Shown in pieces: positions 8,062 through 28,056 of a stretch of DNA of 64,000 nt (the stretch's first letter is position 1; each line of letters begins with the position of its first letter). Source of the stretch: Adineta vaga (lineage: Eukaryota > Animalia > Rotifera). A program made the translations under genes and the position numbers. The notes beneath the pieces were generated by a model, which saw only the letters and a list, made by a program, of their open reading frames with translations, ran no database searches and was not told where the DNA came from. The DNA lies in contig CP075497.1 in NCBI GenBank assembly GCA_021613535.1, positions 1,488,001 to 1,552,000 on the forward strand, in the 5' to 3' direction.

Positions 8062-8706
8062 TTAAATTCCTAAACAACCAACTTTCCTATTTGGTAAGCA
8101 ACATTTCATTCCATTTGTATTTGATTGTTCTGTATAATGCATTGAAAAGAAATCATTTTGAATCCAAAAGAATTTGTTTAATGTAAGAACAGCCGATTTT
8201 TTTGTTTCATTATCGATTTGTTGATTTGAAAGAACAACATCAAGAAGAATATGTTCAATATAACTAAATGATATATTAATATGAATAAAATCAACATCAA
8301 TTGAATGTGAACCAGCCATTTTCGTATGAATTTTACCAACATAGGATAAATATTCAAGAAATGCATCATTCCAAACTTTTTGTCGAAGAATTCTTTTCAA
8401 GTATTTTGTCATGCTTGTTCGACGAAAGCACATTTGTTCGGATTGTAATGTTAACTCAGATTCATTGACTGTAACTGTGCCATTATATCCAAAATGACGC
8501 ATAAGAAAGTATCGTTTTGTAATATCGAAATCAAGAAATTTTTGAAAGATTTGATCAACTATATCTGGTAATATTGGAGCTGTAAGTTTACCAATAGTAT
8601 TTAGTATAGCAATATCATTCGTAGTAAAATTAATAAATTTTGATAAATACTCGAAACGATAGCGAAGATTATTTTCTACTAATTTATGATCAATGTGTTG
8701 AGCCAT
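8062..8706 (-). CDS. Protoglobin copy 2, intronless, ending in CaaX (CLGI)
   Basis: Paralog of 5805-6446; the likely start is the ATG at 8706 (MAQHID), aligning with MTQHID of copy 1. Confidence 0.85.
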   Translation of the reverse strand: MAQHIDHKLVENNLRYRFEYLSKFINFTTNDIAILNTIGKLTAPILPDIVDQIFQKFLDFDITKRYFLMRHFGYNGTVTVNESELTLQSEQMCFRRTSMTKYLKRILRQKVWNDAFLEYLSYVGKIHTKMAGSHSIDVDFIHINISFSYIEHILLDVVLSNQQIDNETKKSAVLTLNKFFWIQNDFFSMHYTEQSNTNGMKCCLPNRKVGCLGI

Positions 8707-9380
8707 TACATATAAGAAGGTTCTTCGTTTTTTTCTAGGCGTCAATAATTATATATGAAATGTAGAAAGAACAAAGTACCGGGTAGGAAGTAAATAAATC
8801 GTCCAGACTAAACAGAGTGAAGACGAACATGGGCATTATTTCCGGTTGATGGCGAGAGAAAATTTATACTATAGAAATAAAATCAAAGTTTCTTATTCTT
8901 TTTTTTGATTGATGTTAGTAAAAAGAAGAAAAAGATTCTAATTTAACATTCTTTTTCTTTCTTTGAAAAAGAGAAATAGATGGATGCTTTGATAATTTTG
9001 CCAGAAGAATCCAAAGATGAAATTTAACGATAACTAATAATTTATTCGAGATTTTATCTATGAAATTTTAATGAAAAGATCAAATGTACTTGTCATATAT
9101 TCTTTTGAAATGGTGTAACAATGCATGAGTAATAATTTACTCATGTTTATCTCTTTTTTTACTATTCTTTAATGATAATAATTTTCGTCTGATATTTATA
9201 CGGAGTTTTTTATTCATGTATCGATTGAGTTTGGTTATAAATGAGAAAATATAGATCGAAGATACAAGTTTTTCATTTTAATTTACTACTTTCATTGTTT
9301 ATTTCATATTGATCATGATATGATTGCCATAAATCATTTTATTTTAGCATATAAATAATCAAACAAGAAATAATAGTCCT

Positions 9381-10722: not shown

Positions 10723-13700
10723 TTATACGATGTTCGCTATTTTGTGGATTATTTGTTTTTGTATTTTGATTTTTAAATTCGTACAAAATGGTACTTGACA
10801 ATTTTGAACTAAGCAACTTTTTGCATGATACCAACAAAGAAATATAACTTGTTTACATATATTACATTGACTATTTTTTCCTTTACATTCTCTCGTATGT
10901 TGTATAACACGTTTATAACGATAACAAGGACGAGTAACACATAGAACATCTCGACAGTTAACAGCATGTAACAAGCTTTGAATACATCGTTCCATTCGCT
11001 GTTGACTTTCCAATTGTGAACTAGTCATTGATTTCTCATTTGTATCTGAACAATTTTGATCATAATTTTCAACATTTAATGGACTTGAATGTTCCATTTC
11101 ATCTTCATGTTTTGATTCGATATGATAACATTTTTCATATTGTTGTTGACATGCATTACAATTATGTGAAGATCTTTCGATTGCTGATGTATGTAATTCA
11201 TACAATAAATTCATTGTAGAAAATTTTGCACGACGTAATGACGAAAATTCTAAATGTTTATTACGAGAAAAATTTAAAAATGTCTCTCGTGTCTTCATTA
11301 AATGACATTGAATTAGAGCATCAGTATCATTGAGAGTAGGATATAAAACCATTTGATTGTATAAACGAATGACAAGAAATTCCTGAAGAAGATTTTATAG
11401 ATAAGTATAACTTTCAAAATTTAAATAACCTGTTTATATTTCCCCATTGTAGAAAGTATTTTTGACATGAGATCAGTACAATTTGACGGTTGATTTTTCT
11501 CTATTCTTTGTTGACTTAAAGCTGTTTTCATTAATTTTTCTTCCTTATGTACGTTCGAAGATTTACGTTTACCCGAATTCTACAGAAAAAACAAAAGTTA
11601 TAAATTAATTTAAATGAACTAATTCTTTCAATTCACATTTGTTGAATCTTCTGTATCATCCATTTGGTGTTCTCTTTGATCTTCTTCTTCATCAAGTTCT
11701 ATAAATATCATTAAATTTAATAGAATTTTCTAATTACCAATACTACTACAAACCTTTAATAGCTTGTTCAATTATAATCGGCCAAAAATCACCTTCAAAA
11801 TATGGAATATTATATACATTATTGTCTTGATTCTCCAAAACATCTTCCATAATGTTCTATAAATAAATAATTCTATGTCATTTCTAAATTTGTCTTATTC
11901 TTTACCTTATAATCAATCACAACATGCTCTGCAATTGCTTTAATAAGCATATCTTTAAACCAATCTCGGAATTGTTTTGGTGATAATATACGTTGTAATG
12001 ATGGATGACGATAAAATATATAATCATTTTCTTTACTTGATGGATACGCCCATATATGTACAGAAATATAACCAAGTTGTTTGATATAATCTAAATATCC
12101 AATTAAGATTTCATGATAAATATCTGTACGATAAATTTCTGGTTGAAAATAATCTAAGAAATCTATAAATGATATATAAACACGTCGTGTATTTGGTGCT
12201 TGACAACAATCATTATATTCTTGAACGTGCATACCAAAGAAAACAACATCAACGCCATCAATTTCTTGAAAAGCAAATATAGTTTTTCTTCAATATGGAT
12301 AGTCATTTATTAATACTTGATTTGAAGAATATTTTTTTAAACATGGTTTTACTTGACATATTCCATCACTTGCAGATAATACTCGAATTGTAACATGACC
12401 CGTATGACAACTTTTACTAATTAAAAAATTCTTAACACGTTGTTCTAATGTTACTTCTAGATTATTTTTTGTTAATTTTGATGCTTTGTAACGATTATCT
12501 TTACGTTCTATTTTATATTCATGTACACATGTAGGACATATAAAACCTTCTGACGATATTTGATTTAAATGTAATGCACAAATTTCATGCCAACGGCGTG
12601 AACATACAATACAATGAACTATTGCCTCCGGTTCGTTTCCATCGTTTCTAGCTGATGAGAATAATGATTTTGATATTTCAATTAATGTTTGTGTTGAATC
12701 ATTACCAACGAATATTTTATCACCTTGAACGGAATCAAAACATTGCGAACAAAACGTGTATTTATCATTAGATAAATTGGAATGTAATGATTCTGGTTTT
12801 GGATGATAATAATAATAATAGTAATTTTCATCAGGTAAAATTTGACAAGATGATTGATTTCCGTAACATAACAGATTTTGAGGCAAATAAGTATATTGTT
12901 GACCACAACAATAGCCTAACCTTTGAATAATAGGCTTGATAGCTCTAGCAAATACTTCCGAAAGTTCCGTAGACATTCTATAAATACGTGTTGTTTTCTT
13001 ATTATAAAGCCAAGCATTATTAAACATTAACCACGCATCGTCACAAAACTCTACAGGATTTTTATATTCTCCTCGTTTTAATTTATTTTGCATTGTTAAT
13101 ATATCCATTGGATGTTTAATTATCGTTGAATAATCAAGAAAATTTAATTCGATTGGATCAATTGGTAATCGAAATGGAGATGAAGCTTTAAAAGCAATCA
13201 TTGTATGTATAACAGGCTCAAGATGTACGCGTAACGCTTCTGAAGTAAACTGTATTGGATGTGTTGATTGAGTATCATTATTTGTTGAATTATTGTTTGA
13301 TATCTAAAAGTGAGAAATATTAATTATTATTGAAAAACTCCGATAAATAAAATGTCTGATATGTTATATTGGAAAAAGAAACTCGGTCTATATTTATAAA
13401 TTATTCGTTTTATTTTTTTAAAAATGTTAACTTTTAAATTTGTAGTTGATATATGTTCTTGCACATGTTTCTGTTCAAGACGGTTTTCTAATTTTTTTTA
13501 TAACTTATAAATTTTTTCGGCTAGTCTTTCAAAATACTCTTCATGACTATTTGATATTTCGAATGTTTTATTTTCTATACGTCTTGCATAATTCATTAGA
13601 CTAATCAAACGTTGATCTTTCGTCATTTTCTCATTTCTATTGACTGGTACTAGTGCAAACAAAACCTTTTGTATCAAGTGATTTCGTACTTCCTGCGTAG

Positions 13701-13791: not shown

Positions 13792-14744
13792 TGTAAATGA
13801 TGAAAACTAAATGAGAATATATGAATTAAAGTTTAGAAAATTTATTTTATAATGAATGAACGAGAATAAATAATAGTGTTAATAGAACAAAGTACTTATG
13901 CAGTGGATCTTTAAGGAAACGAATAGATGTGAGTAATAAATATCTATACCTTTTGTGTTATTAGAAAGTAAAATTAATGTTCTTTTACAGTTGATTATAA
14001 AATCGATACGAATACATTTGCTACTTATCATATGGTATTTAACTGATGATAATGCTTCTTTTTATAGTAGAAAGTGACTTAGTCGTTTCTTCCTATTTTG
14101 GAAATTTCCAACAGAAATAGAAAAAGAAAAGAACATTTGATTTGTTCTCTTTTCATGCACAAAACAACGTACAGGTAATATTTTAATATCAAATTAACGT
14201 AATAAATAAAAATATGTTTTAGTCAACAATTCAAGACCTACCAATATGTAAGAGTATATTTCGACTCTTTTTTCGATTTTCATTATCAAAAAATAGTTGT
14301 AATTACGTAATAGTACGATGATACCTCTCAAACACGTGGGTATGCGAGATAAAACGAATGAAAACTAAATGAAGCATGACACGACAATATACATATAATT
14401 TTCTTTTTTGATGGCAAAATTATTTCGCCATAAACCGCCATTCAATAAGAGGATGATTGAGGATAAAAGTTCTTTTTATTAATTCGCAAGCACAGAATCC
14501 GAACTCAAGCTCAGGCTTGGAACAGTACATATTTATCTCTGATCAAAGTAGAGTAGACATGTATTGTAGTGAAATCCCCAACATCATCATATGTTTGAAA
14601 CATACATTTTAGAACAGGAATTAAAAATTGAGGTGTGAGGTGAGGACGATGGCGAAAATCAAAAGCACATTGTATTCAGTTTTTGTGAGAATTTACAGTT
14701 CTTTCGTGTGTTTAATTATCTCATTATGAACTATACTAATAAGT

Positions 14745-15038
14745 TCATTCAAATAGTCTTCTGATGTATAATTCTCTTGCATGACGAACTATTGTTTGTA
14801 ATTGTTGAGCTTTTTCATTATGCGATGTGGTTGGATCGAGTATTTGTTGAATATATTGATTAATTTCATCAGCTAATACAAGACGTTGATGACCATTTGA
14901 CTTCGTATTTGGAATAACTCGACCTGTACCAAATTCATATTCTATTCGATGTCCATTGAAAAATTGATCACCAAACATCGGTAAGACTAGCATAGGCTTT
15001 CCAGCAGACATACTCACGAGCACACTATTCAATTTCAT
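14745..15038 (-). pseudogene. C-terminal fragment of a UDP-glycosyltransferase (GT1)
   Basis: NSVLVSMSAGKPMLVLPMFGDQFFNG is the second half of the UGT signature; the preceding HxG residues and the N-terminal domain are missing. Confidence 0.75.
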
Positions 15039-15172
15039 GTGTTCTCTTTTGCTTTTGAGAATATCTGATACACCAACAATTGTCCATACATAAAATTTAT
15101 CTCGTAGATCACAATAAAATGAACCAGCTTTATTTTCTTTAATTCGATTAATTTTCTTGTGAAGATCTTAAA

Positions 15173-16121
15173 CCCTTTGGTTACGGTTTTTTTTTGCAAA
15201 TGCATCTTTTATTTTTCGTTCAGAAATAGTTTATAATGAGTTCCAGTAGTATAAAAAAATACTCAAAAGTGTTTTAAAGTATGATAATCTCCAAAACAAT
15301 CTATCACACCAAGTCCAACATCACAGATATCACATTGATAACGTGTTTTTTTACGCTTCTTCTCACGTCTACTTGTACGACTGCAAACTATACAATCCGT
15401 TCGTGGACATTTCTGTGTTGTTGTTGCTGAGACAAGTGATGGGAAATGGCGTCCAGTAAGACGTACCGGATTATCACTAGTAATAGGACGACCGCCTATA
15501 GGTTTCAGTTGAGAATACCTTTCGATCATTTGTCGTATAAGTTCGCATCGAAAATCTCCAAAATGAATAGACTTTTTATGCTTCATTTTGAATAACATAT
15601 ATGCGTTGAATGTTGATAAGTCAAGCAGATGAAAGAAGAACTTTTTATACCATTTAATAGTTTTTCATAAGCATTCTACGAAACTAATTTGTATGTCAGT
15701 TTTATCAACTGACCCCATGTTTTTGTTGTAATGTACGATACATTCCGGTTTCTCAACTATTTTTTGTGTCTTCCAATCACTTTTTCGTGTTTCTATCATC
15801 CTCGGCTTGTGAATTGTACATAGCATAAAGACTTCTCGTTTATCTTGCCACTTCAAAACCATTAGATTATTGCTGTTAATATAGTCAAAATCACCTTTTG
15901 TGAGCTTGTCAAGTTTGACTGAACCAATACGGTTTCGGCGTACAGTACCATATGCACCGGTCTTGAGTTCATATAATTATTCAAATAAACGTGACGTGAT
16001 ACTTTTGTTAGAATAAGAGGAACAAATAGTAGTTCTTTTGATAAAGTCTAAATGACATTGTATTAAAGATAATACCTACAAAAGTTCAATGCCCATATAT
16101 GGGCCTCCCGTAACCAAAGGG
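15173..16121 (-). mobile_element. Internally deleted (non-autonomous) piggyBac transposon, 949 bp
   Basis: Perfect 14-bp TIRs CCCTTTGGTTACGG (15173-15186 and 16108-16121); TTAA on the right and TTAAA on the left; transposase 3' half (GTVRRNR, WQDKREV, YNKNMGSVDKTD, KWYKK, C-terminal Cys-rich domain) with an in-frame TGA at 15665-15667. Confidence 0.95.
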
Positions 16122-16600
16122 TTAAGGATAGATGTATTTGAAATAAAAATTGAATTACATCGAACTAATAGAATAAAATTAGTTTATGAGGATGTGGAGC
16201 GTGGTGGGTATGAAAAGAAGAGACTATCGATATCTACCACCAAAGATTTCATTTTATGATTGAACTTTTGTTAAATATCACGTGCCAATATATCCTTTAT
16301 TAAAATGAACTCATTTGTCAATCTCAAAAATTACTAATGAAAAATACGTATCTTGAGAGTATACTGACACTCATAGTCATACACAGCAGACGAAACTCTA
16401 TCTCGACACATACATTAACGCCATCTTTCTGCATATACTACCTATTCGCTTTTGTTGATATCGTCAGACTTCGTTATCTTTTTTTCAATAACAAAAATAC
16501 AATACTTTCAGTTTCAGTAAAGTAAATTTCTTTTCATAACAAACAAAATATATTCAATAGCTTGCATTCTCAACAAACTTTTGTGGAACTTGAAGCGAAT

Positions 16601-19600
16601 ATGTACACATTTTCAACATTACCGATCGAACTCGTCTATCGGATTTTGGATCATCTGACTGATTTTACACTATTTTGTTCAATGCAAAATATTTCCCAAC
16701 GTTTTAATCAAATTCTTAACGTTTATCATCGCTATCAAGTAAGTCTTCTAAGTGCTTTAACTATTTTCTTGTCTGTTCAAGCACACATGAGCCTCACAAT
16801 ATCTAACATGATGAGTTATCAGTGTGAAGCTAGCACCATGAAACTAAGACTTTTGTGAAAATGAATTCCCGTCGATAAAAATGAGTCTATTCGACGCAGA
16901 ATTTGATTCTACATCGAATGGCGCTACTTTCATTCACGGGAAAACGAATGGAAACATTTTATTCGAAATTTTCTTTTATATATACAAGTATGAGAGGAAA
17001 ATAAAAAATCGAGGTAAGCTTCGTCCTGATCGTTTTCCCGTGAATGAAAGTAGCGCCATTCGATGTAGAATCAAATTCTGCGTCGAATAGACTCATTTTT
17101 ATCGACGGGAATTCATTTTCACAAAAGTCTTAGTTTCATAGTGCTAGCTTCGCGGTGCTAGCTTCACACTGATTGATGAGTTTACTCAAAGAAAAAACAA
17201 ATTTCACAATTCTGAAGCAATACCCGCGAGTGACTCAACCACAACAATGACTCATGTCATTAAAAATAATCTTTCCTTCCATCTGTTCTTTTCTATCCAT
17301 GGATATACAATATACATCTTATTCAACCTGCACTCATGTCCCGAATAAGCATAAAACCGTATACTTATAAAACACCTTTCCCATTTCAAATACATGTCTC
17401 CATTGCAACTCCTAGAAAATGCAACAACTAACTGTGAAACCCATCGCATGAAATCAAGTGAACTTTTTTATGTTGTACCACGGCTGAATATTATCTTTCC
17501 CAAACCAACTGTAAAAATAACAATCCCAAACCATTCGAAATAACCGAGTATCATTACCTTCACTACAGTACTCACCCTACTCATCCTACGGTTCGAACAT
17601 CAACTCAGTAATAATCAGTCAAGCAATGACTTTATTTTTCACCTAATGACCCAAATCAAGCACTTACTGAACTCTCTCAAACATCACCAACAAAACCCTT
17701 CTATAATGCATTATCTAGTTGAAAAACGTTAATCTAAAGTTTCGACTGCTATTCGTACATTTTCGAAATAGATATTTTTACACATAGATACTTAACACAC
17801 TAGACCTCGCGAACAATCATATCGACGACCAAAGAGCACAACAAATTGGTGCTGCGTTGCGAACAAACATAGTAATATTCATTCCCACTTCACCTGATCC
17901 GAAGCCATCACTCTCTCTCGTCTATAGACACTGACCGCACTAAACCTCAACAATAATGAAATCGGTGATCAAGGAGGACACCATATTGCCGATGCCTTAC
18001 GAACAAACACAGTAATACACATTCGCCTTTTACCCAATTGACTAATCCATACTATCTCTCTCTCCTATACAGACACTCACCACACTAAATCTCGCGCGCA
18101 ATCAAATCGGGGAACAAGGAGCACAATATATAGGTAATGCTTTGCGTACAAACACGGTAATATTCATTCGCTCTTCACATAATTGATAGATTCATGCTCT
18201 CTTCTCTACAGACACTCACCACACTAGATCTCGCGCGCAATGAAATCGGGGAACAGGGAGCACAGCATATTAGGGATGTCTTGCGTACAAACACGGTAAT
18301 ATTCATTCGCTCATCACATGATTGAGAGATTCATGCTCTCTTCTCTACAGACACTCACCACACTAAATCTCGCGCGCAATGAAATCGGGGAACAAGGAGC
18401 ACAGCATATTAGGGATGCCTTGTGTACAAATACGGTAATACTCATTCGCTCATCACATACTTGATAGATTCATGCTCTCTTCTCTACAGACACTCACCAC
18501 ACTAGATCTCGGGTACAATGAAATCGGGGAACAGGGAGCACAGCATATTAGGGATGCCTTGTGTACAAATACGGTAATACTCATTCGCTCATCACATACT
18601 TGATAGATTCATGCTCTCTTCTCTACAGACACTCACCACACTAGATCTCGCGCGCAATGAAATCGGGGAACAAGGAGCACAGCATATTAGGGATGCCTTG
18701 TGTACAAATACGGTAATACTCATTCGCTCATCACATACTTGATAGATTCATGCTCTCTTCTCTACAGACACTCACGGCACTTAATCTCGCGTTCAATCGA
18801 ATCGGGGAACAGGGAGCACAACATATTAGGGATGTCTTGCGTACAAACACGGTAATATTCATTCGCTCATCACATGATTGAGAGATTCATGCTCTCTTCT
18901 CTACAGACACTCACCACACTAAATCTCGCGCGCAATCAAATCGGGGAACAAGGAGCACAGCATATTAGGGATGCCTTGTGTACAAATACGGTAATACTCA
19001 TTCGCTCATCACATACTTGATAGATTCATGCTCTCTTCTCTACAGACACTCACCACACTAGATCTCGCGCGCAATCAAATCGGGGAACAAGGAGCACAAT
19101 ATATAGGTAATGCTTTGCGTACAAACACGGTAATATTCATTCGCTCTTCACATAATTGATAGATTCATGCTCTCTTCTCTACAGACACTCACCACACTCA
19201 ATCTCGCGTACAATGAAATCGGTGAACAAGGAGCACAGCATATTAGGGATGTCTTGCGTACAAACACGGTAATATTCATTCGCTCATCACATGATTGAGA
19301 GATTCATGCTCTCTTCTCTACAGACACTCACCACACTAAATCTCGCGCGCAATGAAATCGGGGAACAAGGAGCACAGCATATTAGGGATGCCTTGTGTAC
19401 AAATACGGTAATACTCATTCGCTCATCACATACTTGATAGATTCATGCTCTCTTCTCTACAGACACTCACCACACTAGATCTCGGGTACAATGAAATCGG
19501 GGAACAGGGAGCACAGCATATTAGGGATGCCTTGTGTACAAATACGGTAATACTCATTCGCTCATCACATACTTGATAGATTCATGCTCTCTTCTCTACA

Positions 19601-20119
19601 GACACTCACCACACTAGATCTCGCGCGCAATGAAATCGGGGAACAAGGAGCACAGCATATTAGGGATGCCTTGTGTACAAATACGGTAATACTCATTCGC
19701 TCATCACATACTTGATAGATTCATGCTCTCTTCTCTACAGACACTCACGGCACTTAATCTCGCGTTCAATCGAATCGGGGAACAGGGAGCACAACATATG
19801 GGTGGTGTCTTGCGAACAAATACGGTAATTTTCATTCGCTCTTCATCTAACTGACACATTCATGCTTTCTCTTTCGTCTGTAGACGCTAACCACATTAGA
19901 TCTCCAGGGCAATCTAATCAAGGAACAGGGAGCCCAACATATCGGCGATGCTTTGCGTACAAACACGGTAATATTCATTCGCTCTTCACCTAACTCATAT
20001 ATTCATGCTCTCTCTTTCGTCTATAGACACTAACCACACTAGATCTCGCGTTCAATCGAATCGGGAAAGAAGGAACAGAATACCTGCGATATATTTTAGG
20101 AAACAGGTTGACTTTGTAG
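16601..20119 (+). CDS. F-box + 17 RNI/NLR-type 28-aa leucine-rich repeats (~524 aa, 18 exons), intact after splicing
   Basis: Exon 1 (16601-16738) encodes an F-box (TLPIELVYRILDHL). Sixteen 84-nt phase-0 exons start at 17788, 17928, 18073, 18212, 18351, 18490, 18629, 18768, 18907, 19046, 19185, 19324, 19463, 19602, 19741 and 19884. The terminal exon 20027-20119 ends in TAG. Consensus TLTTLxLxxNxIGEQGAQHIxDALxTNT. Confidence 0.9.
16818..17173. mobile_element. Mutator-like MITE/foldback (356 bp) in intron 1 of the F-box-LRR gene
   Basis: Near-perfect ~130-bp TIRs (ATCAGTGTGAAGCTAGCAC... at 16818-16947 and 17030-17173); 9-bp TSD TGATGAGTT at 16809-16817 and 17174-17182. Confidence 0.9.
18073..19824 (+). 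repeat. 139-bp tandem array (84-nt exon + 55-nt intron), 13 near-identical units with a 973-bp higher-order duplication
   Basis: Exon starts are spaced exactly 139 bp apart; LRR units 5-8 recur as units 12-15. Confidence 0.95.
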
Positions 20120-22547
20120 TTTTGGTGGAAGGAACATTGTTTTGTTGTATTTTTTTGGAGAATTTTTTTTAAAGCAAAGTAGTGGGTAGAAAAATGAATG
20201 CGCATTGTGATTTGAAGTCGTATTAATCGGATGATAGCGTGTTTTGTTTTAATCTCATGTGTTCGGTGTGTGAGAGATAGCTTTTCATCTAAGGTATTGA
20301 TTTGTGTATGTCTGAGAAAAGCGAACGCCCGTGCTGAAAATGTACTATAATTTATCAGTTATGCGAGAATTTTGATGGGGATCAGATCATATCTTCTGAA
20401 ACTGTCTACTCTCAGGAGAATGTCTTATCAAAATTTTGAACAATGCAAAAAGTATGACGAAGAAGGATAACCGTTGACGCATCATATAAGACTTTTAATG
20501 AGTCTGCTGCAATCATTCCCATCGCTGATCTTTGGGAAACGGCTGGAAAAGTGTTTATTAAACATTATGTTGTGATTGAAATCGTAACACAATATACTTT
20601 CGAGCTTTATTTTGAATATTTCTCGTAATAGAGTTGAGTTTAATATCTGAGTGCTTTGCAAATTTTTACTGTATTTGGAACGCTAGAGAGTTGGGGTTGA
20701 CGGCAAGATAAAGTGGATGACGAGTTTTACAACTTCATTTAGTTGCTTCTTGGATGTGACGTTGGATGTTTAATGATAGAAAGATGTTTTGTATTTGTAC
20801 ATCTTTCAACATAAAAGAAAAACTTTCTAGAGAAAAGTTTCCATCTCAGGCTCAACTAAGAAATGCAGCGAGATGCATCTGTAAACACAAAGAGTGTTTC
20901 ATGTTTACATAGTGACACGTACTTATATCCCATTTCTATTTTCTCATTGACATTCAGAGAATTACAAAAGTATCATTGATTTGTGAGTGGCGAAGTCGTT
21001 CTATCTCGAGTGCTTACCATATTTCTTTTTGAATATATTCATCATCGGTGTCGATGAAACCGACTATACTAGATCTATTGAAGTTTTTCATGCTGCGTGC
21101 ATTCAAACAACTACATACGATAATGAACATTTAGTTGTTGAATGTACATCCAAAATAGTTTCTTTATCTAATACGACGATTTTGTTTATTTGTGAAATTG
21201 ATGTGAACTGCCTTTCGAAATCCATCGATGGTCATGAACATTCATCTAAAATATACCATCGACGAATATATTATGACATTTTTTTCATTGAACCAATGAC
21301 ATATTTATCACTGACTTTTTGACTATGAATATATTGATGAAGTATATAATTGTATATTAAATGGAAATCTTCTGTCATATAATATTGGTATTTTGAGAAA
21401 GATAGGATTATATCTGACATGAATTAACAAATAATATTTAACATTAATCGAAAAGAGATGACAAAATTAATGATAAACTTTGTCTGGTTTGATGCAATCA
21501 ATTTTGATCGAAATGTTCGAAATATATTTGTAGAGAATATCGAATTCATATAATAGTCACCTATAACCTTTGAACAATTTCACAGCATCCAAACAATGAG
21601 AATTCAAATGAGTGTTGGATCATAACCAAGATAAAAATGAAGACATTTCCAAGCGTCATTCGAAAGACGATCTTGTAAATTTTAAAATAATTGATTGTAA
21701 ACGAATATTATCCATTATCATACTTAGATAAATAACTAATGAATCCATACAAAAAATTCAATGAATTCGTTTTTGTTTATTTTTTGATGCTTGATGTTTC
21801 CAGATAAAAACTTCCATATATAGACTTAAGAAAAGAGAACAAAATTAAAAACTAACGTTTCATACATCTCATCTATATTTCCACTCATTTGCTCTTATTC
21901 ATAGACATAAGCAGTAATTTATTAGAGTAACTCTATCTTCATTTAATTATCATAAATGTTCTAATCTTTTTTGATCATTGACTTTGAAGGTAATATTTGT
22001 TTAAAGCTTCATGTGATATATTCTTCTCATTGTCATCTTTCAATAGATTCCTATTATTTTATTATTCTATAGAACAATGTTGTCTATTCATTTATGTAAA
22101 TCAAGGTTTACAATTGAAGACCTTCAGGAAGATTTGACTGTTTCTTTTAGAAACCTACTTACTTTTTAGTTGATATCGTATTTTACGTTAATATTACGAG
22201 AAACTATGTTTTATTTTAGATTTTATCAACATTAGAAATTTATTGTGGAACACTTTCATATTGTTATTTCCCTTTTACACTATTTGAGATCAATTGCCTC
22301 TATTTTCTGAGATATACTTACTAAACTTACTTTAAAAAACTAGCTGTTCGCAAATGATCTTGATCATATTTTACCTTTAGAACAATTAAAAACTTTAATA
22401 ATCCAATTTCATGATTTTTCTTTTATAAATACGATTGAACTATTATCTATGTGTGATATACTATATAATTAAGAAATCTAAGTTTATTTCGATTTTCATA
22501 TGATATTATCGAAAACGATTGAATTTCAGTTTTACAATGTGAACATT

Positions 22548-24372
22548 TTATTTTTGAAGAATAAATTGATCAGCAACACTATCATCATCATTATGATAAT
22601 AATTAAAATGTAAATATGTTTGATTAGCAAATATCGTTGTATACCCAAATTGTTGATCGTGATATAAACTCCATTCAGCACCTGAATATCTTCCATCATC
22701 AAGATCTTGTCCAGCCATTCCAATTAAAACTTGAATTATTCCATCATCAATACATTTTGATTGAAACATAGGACATGATCTTTCGTATGAATGACGATGA
22801 GCATAAAGATTAATATCGACATGATATTGATAAAATAATGGTTCTAAATATAATCGAAGCATTAATTTAATTAAATCAGTTGGAGATTCGGATTCGGATG
22901 TGTAAAAGTGGCGATGTGAACCAACAATTAACCATGGTGTCCGAGAACGATTTACTGAACGAAGATCTTGTTCAATCCATTGATATTGATGTGATGTTCG
23001 ACGGAAATCATGTTCTGTTGAATAATAAATAATATGAATTGGACCAACATCAAAACTATACCAAAAGAGACCATTGCCATTCGATGGAGAATGAAAACGA
23101 TGAACCATTGGAACAGCACATTCACCACCTGAATCTTCTCCATAATTACCCCTAAAAATAAATACATTTTATTTCAATGAATCAATCAATAAATGAATGA
23201 AATACCATTTAGGTCGAAATCCTCCTGGACCAGATGCACCACTTGGATCTTTATCACCACCAGTTTCATGATCATATTCATGATTACCAATTCCAACCAT
23301 ATATGGCACATGTGCTGCTATGGGTTGTATTTGTGTCATAAATGCATCCCATAAAGCACCAATACCACGTGCATAACTAATATCACCAATATGAAGCAAA
23401 CAAGTAATATTTGTTGATTGAATTCGTGATGTAACTCGATCAATGGTTAATTTTACACCACGTTCAACTGGTGAGACACCCATATCACCATATGCAATCA
23501 AATAAACAGATTCATCTTTGTTTGCAGGACGATTTTGAAATGAATAAATTTGTGACCAACCATGTTGATCTGTTCCCACACGATAATAATATTTTGTTGA
23601 TGGGCGAAGATTATTTAAAAGAATTGTATGCATATATCCTGGATGAATAAATGTTTGTGGTCCCCAGATGTTAGCTTTTCCTTCACACATATCTGATGCA
23701 GTATATGTTGTTGTTGTTCCACTTTGTTGAAAATTTAATGATGAAGGATCTGATCCATATTGACATTGTGGAAGATATTCAGATGAATTTGTTAAATATG
23801 AAACATAAATTTGATCAATGTGATCACCATAAGCTAAATGAATATGTGTTGGTTCATTGTAATTCAATGGTTGAATCGTTGAAGATTTGGCAATCAATGA
23901 ATAATTACCGAAACAATTTCGATCACGAGAATAATAACGAAATTGAAGTGGACGACGTAAGTTGGTCATTTGCCATGAAGTTTGACTTTGACCAGATTTG
24001 ATAAATTCATAATCAAAATAACCACAAGCTAAAAATAACAATAGCTATTTATAATTGAAATTTATAAATCAATTTACCTTTTGAAAGATCAATTTCATTA
24101 AAATAAATTCCAATAAAATCATCAATACATGAACTTGTCAATGGTGTCCAGCTAATATTGATTACTTCATTACTGATATAACTTGTAGTTGATACATTTA
24201 TATTTGTTACGGCAATAGATTTTGAAGAAATGCCTGTGCCACGATTGCATGCATATGGACTTGGCTCATCACCTATAGCATGACGTTTACCAAAGGGTCC
24301 ATTCGCATTTAAATGTCGATCACCTACAACCAGAATAATAACCAACGAAAAAAGAACGATGAAGTATTTCAT
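22548..24372 (-). CDS. Secreted purple acid phosphatase (large type with an N-terminal Fn3-like domain), 3 exons
   Basis: Signal peptide; motifs YGDMG, GDISYARG, GNHE, GSHR, AHRHSYERSCP; introns at ~24030-24077 and ~23153-23207. Confidence 0.9.
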
Positions 24373-26533: not shown

Positions 26534-28056
26534 TTAATTTGATTTCTTTTTCTGAGACATATATTTCGTGAGATTTGATTCTTTTAAGAATTTCAAAATT
26601 TCATTATGATTTCTTTTATATGTTACTAACAGACCATCTTGAATTAACATATCTTTATTCTGATGATCATAAGAAATAGTTTGATTCAATAAAGTTGTCA
26701 TTGTTCCATGATTTGCTCTTAGAACAGCATCTGGTGCACAAAGATCCCATTTTTTAATTGCTGTTATATGAAGATAATAATCAGCATATTCTTCTAATAC
26801 TTGTACTGTTTTATAACCTGAACCAGCAGATGGTAAAATTCGATATTGTTTATCATGATAAATTTTTTTCAAAATTTCATGTGCTTGACCTGCATGTGAA
26901 CGAGATATAGTAATTTCATCAACATTTGGTGTATGTTTTGGTAAAAGACTATTTTCATCTCGTTTTATCACTGAATGATTCACACCAACCCATCCCCATG
27001 CTAAAAAAAATTCTCAAATGAAATCAAAGATTGATTCAAAGAATTCTTTTACTTATTTTATCAGTAAATGGTGAATAAAGAATTCCAATGGTTGGTTGTT
27101 TTTCTATTGTAACACATAACATAACCATAATATATTGAGTAAGATCCTCTAAAAAAAGAAAGAAATCGATATTCCAAGAACATCTATTTTTATTCTGCCC
27201 GAGATGTTCGATTTGTCCTCTTTTTTTCTTATCAGCATATGTGATAATAGTGCATTTTCAATGATTAATCGATGGTTAGACAAAACAATATTTTGACTGA
27301 GATTTTCAATTAATCGGAGAGACTCTTCGATAAAAAGAAACAGAACAAAAGCAAAGTTCACATGTACCCAACTCTCTTGATTAAGTACGTGTTTTAAGGG
27401 CTTAATAAAAGAAATTATCTTTTGATATAAACAAAAAGCTTAACCTGTAAATTCTTTTGTTGCATCTAATGGATCAATCCAAACTGCAACTGATGATAGT
27501 GGAACAGTCATAAGATTATTTTCATTTTCAATTTTTGGAAGAAGATGTTGTATTTTTTCTTTAATTTGAAATTCCTTTTGAATTGATTGAAATTGTTCGT
27601 TACTAATTGAATCTTTTTCTTCCGAAACAATCTATTTACAATAAGACAACAAACGAATTGTTTTTAATTTTGAAAAACAAAAAAAAGTTTCTTTGTAGAT
27701 ACTTGAAGATTTTGAAATTTCTTTTTTAAACCATTTGTTAAAATTGTATGAGAAACGAGATCTGCAATTGTAACAGGTTCACTCGGTAGATTTATGAATG
27801 CTTTTTTTTTGAAATCTTCTTTTTTATTTTTCAATAATTTAATTGTTTGTCCAGCTTGTTGAACTAATTGAAATGAATGATGAAATAAATCAATTAAATT
27901 AATTTCTTCATCATTTTCAACTGAAATTTTTTTAATTGATGATTTTGATCGACGATTTGATAAGACAAAAAATAAAATAACCGAGCAAAAAATGATGAGA
28001 AAAAGTAAAAAAGAACGATGTGGTTGAATTTTAACTCCAAACATTCGATATGTCAT
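26534..28056 (-). CDS. IMPAD1: Golgi PAP 3'-phosphatase / inositol monophosphatase 3 (type II membrane), multi-exon
   Basis: N-terminal TM helix; PVTIADLVSH, AVWIDPLDATKEFT, ISRSHAG, AGSGYK, IKKWDLCAPDA. Confidence 0.9.

What the first reader, a model, noticed from the sequence alone, without database searches (positions are those of the whole stretch)
16601..20119. Hidden F-box/LRR receptor built as a one-exon-per-repeat cassette array, variable on the binding face
Seen: an F-box exon followed by 17 LRR exons, the first 16 exactly 84 nt and all phase 0, so any exon can be skipped, duplicated or swapped without breaking frame. Introns and scaffold codons are almost identical between units. 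The most diverse positions are LxLxxNx: N/D, A/G/N/Q, R/Y/F/N/G and Q/E/R/H/L, often by multi-base codon swaps (CGC/TAC/TTC). Known: these positions form the concave ligand-binding face of LRRs, and F-box proteins are SCF ubiquitin-ligase substrate receptors. Inference: a modular, rapidly re-assorting intracellular recognition and degradation receptor system, conceptually like VLR or NLR LRR diversification, in a probably asexual animal. No LRR exon appears in the ORF track.
Basis: partly seen in the sequence, partly recalled or inferred. Interest (0 to 1): 0.88.

Follow-up and report, generated by a model that had tools for sequence, protein, structure and literature searches.

The report
Rotifer F-box gene with one-exon LRRs
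This is an intact copy of a fast-evolving Adineta vaga gene family that joins a ubiquitin-ligase docking motif (F-box) to 17 leucine-rich repeats, one per 84-base exon. The repeats vary most at predicted binding positions, but nothing shows cassette-style re-assortment, and the F-box was not seen joined to the repeats in RNA at this copy.

Summary
An F-box-like exon (16601-16738) is followed by sixteen 84-nt phase-0 exons and a terminal exon (17788-20119). Each exon encodes one 28-aa ribonuclease-inhibitor-type LRR, in a 139-bp exon-plus-intron tandem array.

RNA-run contigs show GT..AG joints at six predicted LRR introns, and a DNA run shows none. No RNA covers the F-box exon. RNA contigs run unspliced from 17320 through the predicted acceptor at 17788, so the F-box-to-LRR junction is unproven for this copy.

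The organism is Adineta vaga. Two paralogues have the same architecture with 20 and 18 LRRs. Relatives in Adineta and Rotaria are annotated only as "F-box domain-containing protein".

Codons 6, 8, 9 and 11 carry 39 nonsynonymous against 4 synonymous minimal changes. The other 24 codons carry 54 against 46 (p=1.7e-5).

The arrays evolve in concert and are mosaic. One 754-bp intra-array duplication is 99% identical apart from a 31-nt patch.

The best reading is a germline, birth-and-death and gene-conversion family of candidate SCF substrate receptors, not a somatic or splicing cassette system. One-exon 28-aa LRRs are already known in NOD/NLRC genes, and exon-per-LRR shuffling in Ectocarpus ROCO genes. 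This scan found the same family before at eight or more other loci.

The parts
16601..16738 (+). Exon 1: 46-codon F-box-like motif, followed by a GTAAGT donor in phase 0
   Evidence: PF12937 E 0.0028, PF00646 E 0.004, below cut-off. Of 26 aligned family exon-1 peptides, 23 hit PF12937, best E 1.7e-8. No RNA-contig depth here.
16739..17787 (+). Predicted intron 1 (1049 nt). Its 3' part from 17320 is present in RNA contigs, and TAG at 17785-17787 closes the LRR frame upstream.
   Evidence: There is no convincing ORF in any frame. The homologous introns are 669 nt in L002 and 1781 nt in L003.
16818..17173 (.). Foldback MITE-like insertion: 134-nt inverted arms 96% complementary, with a 9-bp target duplication TGATGAGTT at 16809-16817 and 17174-17182. 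It is absent from L001 and L002.
   Evidence: DNA-run word depth of about 312 over the element suggests a high-copy repeat.
17788..17871 (+). LRR exon 1 (divergent edge unit)
   Evidence: RNA joint 17871>17928 is GT..AG in X12 and X13.
17928..18011 (+). LRR exon 2 (divergent edge unit)
   Evidence: LRR_6 E 6.6e-5.
18073..19824 (+). Core array: LRR exons 3-15, each 84 nt, starting at 18073, 18212, 18351, 18490, 18629, 18768, 18907, 19046, 19185, 19324, 19463, 19602 and 19741. The intervening introns are 55 nt.
   Evidence: RNA joints lie at introns 19129-19184, 19268-19323 and 19685-19740. The 55-nt introns fall into 3 haplotypes, 93-100% identical.
18073..18826 (+). First copy of a 754-bp (about 5.4-unit) intra-array duplication. 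The second copy is at 19046-19799.
   Evidence: 7 differences in 754 nt. Six lie in a 31-nt tract (unit positions 15-45, codons 5-15) of unit 4 against unit 11. That clustering arose in 0 of 200,000 random placements.
19046..19799 (+). Second copy of the intra-array duplication
19884..19967 (+). LRR exon 16 (divergent edge unit)
   Evidence: RNA joints 19823>19883 and 19966>20026.
20027..20119 (+). Terminal LRR exon: 30 codons plus TAG at 20117-20119
   Evidence: An RNA contig continues to 20187, giving a 3' UTR of at least 68 nt.
15172..16121 (-). Internally deleted piggyBac remnant about 480 bp upstream of the ATG. It has TTAA duplications at 15168-15171 and 16122-16125 and terminal inverted repeats. 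The site is empty in L001 and L002.
   Evidence: PF13843 E 5.7e-6 for ORF 15665-15862.
15033..22317 (.). Extent of the block shared with paralogue L002. Excluding the two insertions it is about 6.5 kb. Flanks are 87-89% identical and the array about 78%.

Best explanation
The locus is an intact member of a bdelloid-rotifer gene family.

Architecture. One exon encodes an F-box. A tandem array of single-repeat exons then encodes a ribonuclease-inhibitor/NLR-type LRR solenoid. Summing exon lengths gives 46 + 16x28 + 30 = 524 codons.

How it evolves in the germline:
- Unequal crossing-over duplicates blocks of 139-bp units. The clearest case is a 754-bp duplication that is still 99% identical.
- Short-tract gene conversion homogenises introns and scaffold codons within each array and shuffles short patches between units.
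- Selection favours amino-acid change at repeat positions 6, 8, 9 and 11. These lie on the beta-strand and the following loop, on the ligand-facing side.

Inferred function. The LRR surface binds a protein target, and the F-box docks it to Skp1-Cul1 for ubiquitination. The family would then be a germline repertoire of degradation receptors, analogous to the expanded F-box families of nematodes and plants.

What is shown: the gene structure, LRR splicing, the family, the variability pattern, concerted evolution and the mosaic units.

What is inferred: Skp1 binding, ligand binding and any defence role.

At this copy the F-box-to-LRR splice is not shown. The RNA seen starts in, or retains, the last 470 nt or so of intron 1.
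For: - Structure and repeat statistics.
- Splicing: GT..AG joints at six predicted introns in three RNA-run contig sets and none in the DNA run.
- Organism and paralogues. L002 has an F-box plus 20 LRR exons, and L003 an F-box plus 18.
- Junction conservation: in all three loci the exon-1 donor GTAAGT follows codon 46 in phase 0, and an AG acceptor precedes the first LRR exon.
- Models of Adineta ricciae, A. steineri and Rotaria join '...RYQ' directly to 'TLT..L.L'.
- F-box identity at family level: 23 of 26 peptides hit PF12937.
- Selection pattern. The same positions 8, 9 and 11 have the highest entropy in 40 repeats from other species.
- Concerted evolution: 48 of 51 units have their nearest neighbour in their own array.
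- Mosaicism.
- AlphaFold model of an A. ricciae relative: the LRR part has pLDDT above 90 with strands at repeat positions 4-6. The nearest solved folds are NOD2, NLRP, RI and axonemal RI-type LRRs.
Against: - No RNA contig covers exon 1 or shows the 16738>17788 joint.
- Three RNA runs carry contigs that run unspliced from 17320-17591 into LRR exon 1 while splicing intron 2. In that RNA the LRR frame has TAG just upstream and no in-frame ATG until unit 15.
- The window's F-box exon scores below Pfam's cut-off. A family profile finds no solved F-box structure, and the F-box part of the model is low-confidence.
- This copy alone carries a piggyBac remnant in its upstream region and a MITE in intron 1.
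- The dN/dS tests use non-independent, recombining repeat units and only four codons.
- No binding, Skp1 or expression-response data exist.
Confidence: 0.65

Rival explanations
1. This copy is disabled or re-wired. After the piggyBac and MITE insertions, transcription starts inside former intron 1 at about 17.3 kb. The RNA would then be F-box-less, essentially non-coding or decaying, even though the exons still look intact.
For: - RNA depth is zero over 16301-17280, including exon 1, but 3-6 over the apparently single-copy stretch 17320-17787.
- Contigs continue through the acceptor at 17788 yet splice intron 2.
- Both insertions are absent from L001 and L002.
- The acceptor at 17788 has a weak pyrimidine tract.
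Against: - All 18 exons are open with intact splice sites.
- Contigs are not reads, and the tool warns that a hole proves nothing.
- A DNA contig also breaks at exactly 17320, so that end may be an assembly-graph branch and not a transcript start.
- A long intron 1 is shared by the paralogues: 669 nt in L002 and 1781 nt in L003.
Confidence: 0.22
2. This is a combinatorial cassette system. Exon skipping, duplication or somatic rearrangement would generate many receptor isoforms from one locus, as in VLRs.
For: - All internal exons are 84 nt and phase 0, so skipping would preserve the frame.
- One contig joint skips 333 nt with GT..AG ends.
- Human NLRP3 uses LRR-exon skipping (PMC6642158).
Against: - The 333-nt joint has only a 21-nt anchor. 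It fits the ordinary exon 7 to exon 8 junction equally well, because exons 5 and 7 share their 3' ends.
- No rearranged form appears in the DNA run.
- The germline gene is complete.
- No orphan or inverted LRR cassettes exist in the window. All 10 pattern matches are in-array on the + strand.
- Diversity is fully explained by differences between germline units and paralogues.
Confidence: 0.05
3. The protein is an RI/NLRC-like binding protein without an SCF role. The N-terminal motif would be a degenerate F-box used for another interaction, or for none.
For: - Exon 1 scores below the Pfam cut-off.
- The profile search finds no solved F-box structure.
- The repeats are RI-type of 28 aa, not the cysteine-containing type of classical FBXL proteins. 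The nearest folds are NOD2, NLRP, RI and axonemal LRR proteins.
Against: - The canonical LPxE(L/I)xxxI(L/F)xxL core is invariant or nearly so across 26 family members.
- Of those 26, 23 hit F-box-like and 15 hit F-box.
- Exon 1 is more conserved than the LRR binding positions, as expected for a docking module.
Confidence: 0.08

Closest known systems
FBXL-class F-box proteins (Skp2, FBXL3, TIR1): SCF substrate receptors
   Same: Both have an N-terminal F-box followed directly by an LRR solenoid presumed to bind the substrate.
   Different: The repeats here are 28-aa RI/NLR-type (LxxLxLxxNxIGxxGA...), not the 26-aa cysteine-containing type. Each repeat is its own exon in a tandem array. The family is lineage-expanded and hypervariable. 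No Skp1 or substrate data exist.
Expanded F-box families of Caenorhabditis and plants under positive selection (Thomas 2006, as cited in PMC8120010; Ma et al. 2021, PMC8120010)
   Same: In both, the F-box is conserved, the substrate-binding domain is fast-evolving, the family is large and lineage-specific, and a role in defence or adaptation is suspected.
   Different: The binding domain there is FTH or FBA, not LRR, and diversity there arises by gene duplication. Here it arises by duplication and conversion of repeat exons inside each gene.
NOD/NLRC genes: one 28-aa RI-type LRR per frame-preserving exon (Hoss et al. 2019, PMC6642158)
   Same: The repeat class and repeat length are the same, and one LRR per exon preserves the frame. 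The nearest solved folds include NOD2 and NLRP.
   Different: There is no NACHT domain, and the N-terminus is an F-box. The introns are about 55 nt and are homogenised together with the exons. Exon-boundary homology with NLRC genes was not tested.
[quoted passage not shown] 2012, PMC3341825)
   Same: One LRR per exon, LRR number differing between recent duplicates, recombination within the LRR region, and diversifying selection on LRR residues.
   Different: Those exons are 72 nt (24 aa) in a ROCO GTPase context, and that paper reports orphan and inverted LRR exons in introns. No such orphan exons are seen here.
Lamprey VLR somatic assembly
   Same: Only the idea of LRR modules as units of diversity.
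   Different: The VLR germline gene is incomplete and is assembled somatically from flanking cassettes. This gene is complete, is spliced conventionally, and shows no DNA-level joined forms.

Membership tests
F-box protein / SCF substrate receptor | N-terminal F-box motif recognisable by Pfam PF00646 or PF12937 | tested here: met
   The window exon alone scores 17.8 and 17.5 bits, below the cut-offs of 24.3 and 20.5. Of 26 aligned family exon-1 peptides (48-87% identical to it), 23 hit PF12937 with best E 1.7e-8, and 15 hit PF00646. The feature is therefore met at family level and borderline for this exon alone.
F-box protein / SCF substrate receptor | F-box and substrate-binding domain on one mRNA and protein | tested here: inconclusive
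   No RNA contig shows the 16738>17788 joint or covers exon 1, and contigs read through the acceptor. The splice sites and phase are conserved in paralogues L002 and L003. Models from other species join the two parts directly.
F-box protein / SCF substrate receptor | Binds Skp1 and assembles with Cul1 | not testable with these tools
   This needs co-IP or yeast two-hybrid. The F-box part of the AlphaFold model has pLDDT below 50, and the family profile finds no solved F-box structure.
Classical FBXL subfamily | Cysteine-containing LRRs of about 26 aa | tested here: not met
   The repeats are exactly 28 aa with N at position 10 and an IGxxGA motif, which is RI-type. Foldseek's top matches are RI, NOD2, NLRP and axonemal LRR proteins. 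The list also includes the bacterial F-box/LRR effector RipG4 at rank 15.
RI-type (RNI-like) LRR proteins | 28-29-aa repeat with LxxLxLxxN/C consensus forming a beta-strand/helix solenoid | tested here: met
   Each exon hits Pfam LRR_6. A relative's model shows alternating strand and helix with pLDDT above 90. Matches to NOD2, NLRP3, NLRP1 and RI have E from about 7e-10 to 1.5e-8 and TM-scores by the model of 0.67-0.77.
NLR (NACHT-LRR) receptors | Central NACHT/NB-ARC NTPase domain | tested here: not met
   Exon 1 is F-box-like. Intron 1 has no open frame or domain. Relatives have an F-box directly followed by LRRs.
VLR-like somatic LRR assembly | Incomplete germline gene completed by copying flanking cassettes at DNA level | tested here: not met
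   The germline gene is complete with canonical GT..AG introns. Joined forms occur only in RNA runs, not in the DNA run. There are no stray cassettes in the 64-kb window.
Ectocarpus-type exon-shuffled LRR genes | One LRR per exon with LRR number varying between close paralogues | tested here: met
   The three A. vaga loci have 17, 20 and 18 LRR exons. An intra-array 754-bp duplication is present.
Ectocarpus-type exon-shuffled LRR genes | Orphan or inverted LRR exons inside introns | tested here: not met
   All unit matches are on the + strand and in register. The inverted-repeat search of 16000-18000 found only the MITE.

The most novel reading that the evidence does not exclude
The family may be a germline-encoded intracellular recognition repertoire of bdelloid rotifers. 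Dozens of F-box proteins would have NLR-type LRR surfaces that are continually re-patterned by duplication and short-tract gene conversion of single-repeat exons, within and between loci. They would mark foreign proteins (from pathogens, transposons or horizontally acquired genes) for SCF-dependent degradation. That would be a 'restriction by degradation' arm of immunity in an animal lineage without conventional sex.
Probability: 0.2. Interest if true: 0.75.

Novelty: new variant of a known kind. Interest (0 to 1): 0.5.

Why it matters
Bdelloid rotifers are ancient asexuals with large expansions of repeat-containing gene families whose roles are unknown; LRR families are named among them in PMC3846280. 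This family combines three ideas that are each known elsewhere:
- F-box adaptor families under positive selection.
- NLR-type LRRs encoded one per exon.
- Exon-level recombination as a source of diversity.

If the proteins really are SCF receptors with fast-changing specificities, they would be a tractable candidate for intracellular non-self recognition in bdelloids. They would also illustrate how gene conversion, prominent in these genomes, can create diversity as well as erase it.

There is a practical point too. Public A. vaga gene models badly under-call these genes. One 18-LRR locus is annotated as a 138-aa protein, so family size and diversity are underestimated in current annotations.

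Tried and rejected
- A profile of 26 family F-box peptides found nothing among solved structures at E up to 1.
- I searched for the public annotation of this locus through the neighbouring purple acid phosphatase. No A. vaga protein was returned, so I could not see how the record annotates this gene.
- I looked up further F-box hits to find more A. vaga paralogues. They were A. ricciae or metagenome contigs.
- I tested Penelope-mediated mobilisation, an idea from PMC3846280, by scanning for hammerhead ribozymes. Rfam scans of window 14000-23000 and L002 12000-21000 found no hammerhead. The only matches were sub-threshold miRNA-like hits on the MITE hairpin. The ends of the 6.5-kb block shared with L002 show no terminal repeats.
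- I looked for a hidden coding exon in intron 1. There is no convincing ORF in any frame.
- Exon-skipping evidence was rejected. The 'skips 333' and 'skips 395' joints have anchors of 21-22 nt. One has non-canonical GC..CA ends, and both are explained by identical repeat ends.
- An assembly artefact was considered. Independent DNA runs from 8 studies hold 26-68% of the stretch's words, but short-read contigs cannot confirm the unit count.
Exons were searched one by one by reference, the protein length is a sum of exon lengths, and the structure model is of a natural A. ricciae relative.
Full report
**Observation**

- An ATG at 16601 opens a 46-codon exon that ends in phase 0 at a GTAAGT donor (16738|16739).
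- From 17788 there are sixteen exons of exactly 84 nt. Each is preceded by AG, followed by GTAAT and free of stops.
- The terminal exon (20027-20119) has 30 codons and ends in TAG.
- Introns are 55 nt for units 3-14 and 56-61 nt at the edges.
- Tandem Repeats Finder reports a 139-bp period, 15.2 copies and 88% matches. It is the only large array in the window.
- A 44-nt unit pattern matches 10 times, all on the + strand and in register, against 0 expected by chance.
- Summing exon lengths, the model encodes 46 + 16x28 + 30 = 524 residues.

Exons were searched singly by reference.

**What the exons encode**

Each LRR exon hits Pfam LRR_6 with E from 6e-5 to 0.08. The repeat is 28 aa with L at positions 2, 5 and 7, N at 10 and an IGxxGA motif, which is the ribonuclease-inhibitor (RI) class.

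Exon 1 hits F-box-like and F-box at E 0.003-0.004, below the curated cut-offs. I searched 1.84 billion proteins with exon 1.
- 402 representatives scored E of 0.001 or better.
- Among 26 aligned family peptides the LPxELVYRI(L/M)D core is nearly invariant.
- 23 of the 26 hit F-box-like, with best E 1.7e-8.

The F-box assignment is therefore sound at family level and borderline for this exon alone. A profile of these peptides found no solved structure.

**Organism and relatives**

- Cluster look-ups name Adineta vaga.
- Paralogues lie on chromosome CP075496.1 of assembly GCA_021613535.1.
- P0151 is GenBank ADD91459.1, 'leucine rich repeat containing protein [Adineta vaga]'. It is a third paralogue with spliced 28-aa LRR exons.
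- Relatives in A. ricciae, A. steineri and Rotaria are annotated as 'F-box domain-containing protein'. Several join '...RYQ' directly to 'TLT.L.L..N' repeats.
- An AlphaFold model of an A. ricciae relative gives a confident LRR solenoid, with pLDDT above 90 and strands at repeat positions 4-6. Its F-box part has low confidence.
- Foldseek's best solved matches are RI-type LRRs: axonemal LRR proteins, NOD2, NLRP3, NLRP1 and RI.

**Expression at this locus**

I laid contigs from three runs guessed to be RNA, and from one DNA run, at 97% or higher likeness.
- The RNA runs show GT..AG joints at six predicted introns: 17872-17927, 19129-19184, 19268-19323, 19685-19740, 19824-19883 and 19967-20026.
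- The DNA run shows none of these joints, so the LRR exons are spliced as predicted.
- The 3' end reaches at least 20187.

Two results cut against the full model.
- No RNA contig lies anywhere in 16301-17280, which includes exon 1.
- In all three RNA runs, contigs run uninterrupted from 17320-17591 through the predicted acceptor at 17788 into LRR exon 1. Two of them then splice intron 2 correctly.

In such an RNA the LRR frame is closed by TAG at 17785-17787. The only in-frame ATG in the LRR exons is in unit 15. The F-box-to-LRR junction is therefore unproven here. The RNA seen either starts inside intron 1 or retains its 3' part.

Three caveats apply.
- These are contigs, not reads.
- A DNA contig also breaks at exactly 17320.
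- The tool warns that holes prove nothing.

The 'skips 333' joint (18433>18767) has a 21-nt anchor. It fits the normal exon 7 to exon 8 junction equally well, because exons 5 and 7 have identical 3' ends. It is not evidence of exon skipping.

**Copy-specific insertions**

Compared with a metagenomic rotifer contig (L001) and paralogue L002, this copy carries two insertions.
- A 356-bp foldback MITE lies in intron 1 at 16818-17173, with 134-nt arms and a 9-bp target duplication.
- A roughly 950-bp internally deleted piggyBac lies about 480 bp upstream of the ATG at 15172-16121. It has TTAA duplications, and PF13843 scores E 5.7e-6.

Either insertion could affect use of exon 1. This is a testable link to the RNA pattern, not a shown one.

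**Paralogues and array dynamics**

- L002 shares a block of about 6.5 kb with the window (15033-15169 plus 16122-22317). Flanks are 87-89% identical and the array only about 78%. It has an F-box exon, nineteen 84-nt exons with 57-nt introns, and a terminal exon.
- L003 shares only the gene. It sits among ordinary genes and has seventeen 84-nt exons plus a terminal exon. The public annotation gives it only 138 aa.
- In all three loci the exon-1 donor and the first LRR acceptor keep phase 0.
- Units resemble their own array more than other arrays. Mean exon identity is 84-87% within arrays and 77-81% between them, and 48 of 51 units have their nearest neighbour in their own array. This is concerted evolution.

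Within this array, 18073-18826 is duplicated at 19046-19799 with 7 differences in 754 nt.
- Six of the seven lie in a 31-nt tract covering codons 5-15 of unit 4 against unit 11. They include three synonymous changes.
- Such clustering arose in 0 of 200,000 random placements.
- A short conversion tract explains this better than independent mutations do.
- No unit in this array carries the tract, so the donor is probably a paralogue.

Among the nine distinct core units there are 47 four-gamete incompatibilities, with a minimum of 5 recombination or recurrent-mutation events inside 139 nt. The 3' half of the exon and the following intron form three tightly linked haplotypes.

**Variability pattern**

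The table gives minimal change counts, nonsynonymous:synonymous.

| Locus | Codons 6, 8, 9, 11 | Other 24 codons | Fisher p |
|---|---|---|---|
| Window | 12:3 | 20:22 | 0.037 |
| L002 | 13:0 | 14:13 | 0.003 |
| L003 | 14:1 | 20:11 | 0.07 |
| All three | 39:4 | 54:46 | 1.7e-5 |

- Nei-Gojobori dN/dS is 1.3-2.3 at the four codons and 0.25-0.39 elsewhere. Among the core units the four codons show no synonymous difference at all.
- Introns differ by only 4-8%.
- In 40 distinct repeats from other species, entropy peaks at positions 8, 9 and 11, then 14 and 6.
- From established knowledge of RI-ligand complexes, these positions lie on the beta-strand and the following loop, on the concave side.
- Repeat units are not independent samples and they recombine. 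The tests are indicative, not formal proof.
- In this array positions 19, 21-23 and 25 also vary, linked to the intron haplotypes.

**Interpretation**

The best reading is a germline family of candidate SCF substrate receptors. Their LRR surfaces diversify by unit duplication, short-tract conversion and selection.

Nothing supports somatic or splicing-based cassette use.
- The germline gene is complete.
- No stray or inverted cassettes occur.
- Joined forms are seen only in RNA.

**Comparison with the literature**

- One 28-aa LRR per frame-preserving exon is the known organisation of NOD/NLRC genes (PMC6642158).
- Exon-per-LRR recombination with diversifying selection is described for Ectocarpus ROCO genes (PMC3341825).
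- F-box families with conserved F-boxes and positively selected substrate domains are known in Caenorhabditis and plants (PMC8120010, citing Thomas 2006).
- For A. vaga, expansion of LRR-containing multigene families and a possible Penelope-mediated transposition of one LRR gene are mentioned (PMC3846280).
- Four full-text searches found no paper describing this F-box/LRR family in rotifers (PMC12062965 was also checked).
- I found no hammerhead or other Penelope hallmark in the shared block.

**Earlier notes of this scan**

Eight or more other loci of the same genome were already reported as this family. Those notes mention 40 to more than 100 copies, often on a 9-11-kb dispersed unit. I confirmed the organism, the family and the selection pattern independently. 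I fetched only three further A. vaga members, so I did not verify the copy number. The block shared here is about 6.5 kb and has no transposon hallmarks.

**Verdict**

The claimed re-assortment is ordinary germline array evolution. The F-box linkage at this copy and the function remain open.

Noticed in passing
window 15172-16121: An internally deleted piggyBac element with TTAA target duplications and CCCTTTGG.../...CCAAAGGG ends. A 65-aa ORF hits DDE_Tnp_1_7 (E 5.7e-6). The site is empty in L001 and L002.
   Followed up: yes
window 16818-17173: A foldback MITE with a 9-bp target duplication. DNA-run word depth of about 312 suggests a high-copy family. Rfam gives only sub-threshold miRNA-like hairpin matches (MIR161, 34 bits against a gathering score of 90).
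   Followed up: partly
window 8062-8745 (-): A single ORF with a strong Protoglobin domain (E 2.6e-30). This family is mainly prokaryotic, so it may be a horizontally acquired gene.
   Followed up: no
window 10723-13201 (-): CBP/p300-like histone acetyltransferase exons carrying bromodomain, RING_CBP-p300, PHD_P300, HAT_KAT11 and zf-TAZ domains.
   Followed up: no
window 14745-15038 (-): A UDP-glycosyltransferase-like C-terminal ORF (PF00201 at 19.4 bits, just under the 19.5 cut-off). It ends at the left edge (about 15033) of the block shared with L002.
   Followed up: no
window 22548-24041 (-) and 26534-26983 (-): Purple acid phosphatase exons and an inositol monophosphatase exon lie downstream. 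This F-box/LRR copy therefore sits among ordinary genes.
   Followed up: no
L003 10001-14426: Public model I4U23_017691 (138 aa) keeps only the F-box, two LRR exons and the terminal exon, while the locus has 18 intact LRR exons. The P0002 model at L002 ends at the F-box exon and is marked partial. The family is systematically under-annotated in A. vaga.
   Followed up: partly
P0270 (Adineta ricciae CAF1510445.1): This gene model, named 'Transposase Tc1-like domain-containing protein', clusters at 90% identity with P0011, whose last 46 residues match this family's F-box exon. It recalls the Tc1/Mariner HTH capture by F-box genes reported in Caenorhabditis (PMC12062965), or it may be a model merging neighbouring genes.
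   Followed up: no
P0155, P0163: RI-type LRR proteins 51-53% identical to the rotifer repeats are annotated in Legionellaceae and Rickettsiales metagenome-assembled genomes. They could be eukaryote-like effectors or host contamination.
   Followed up: no
window 17908-17910: A DNA-run contig (X1, record 4) matches 17733-18097 but carries small insertions (A and CT) in intron 2. This suggests an allelic or near-identical second copy.
   Followed up: no
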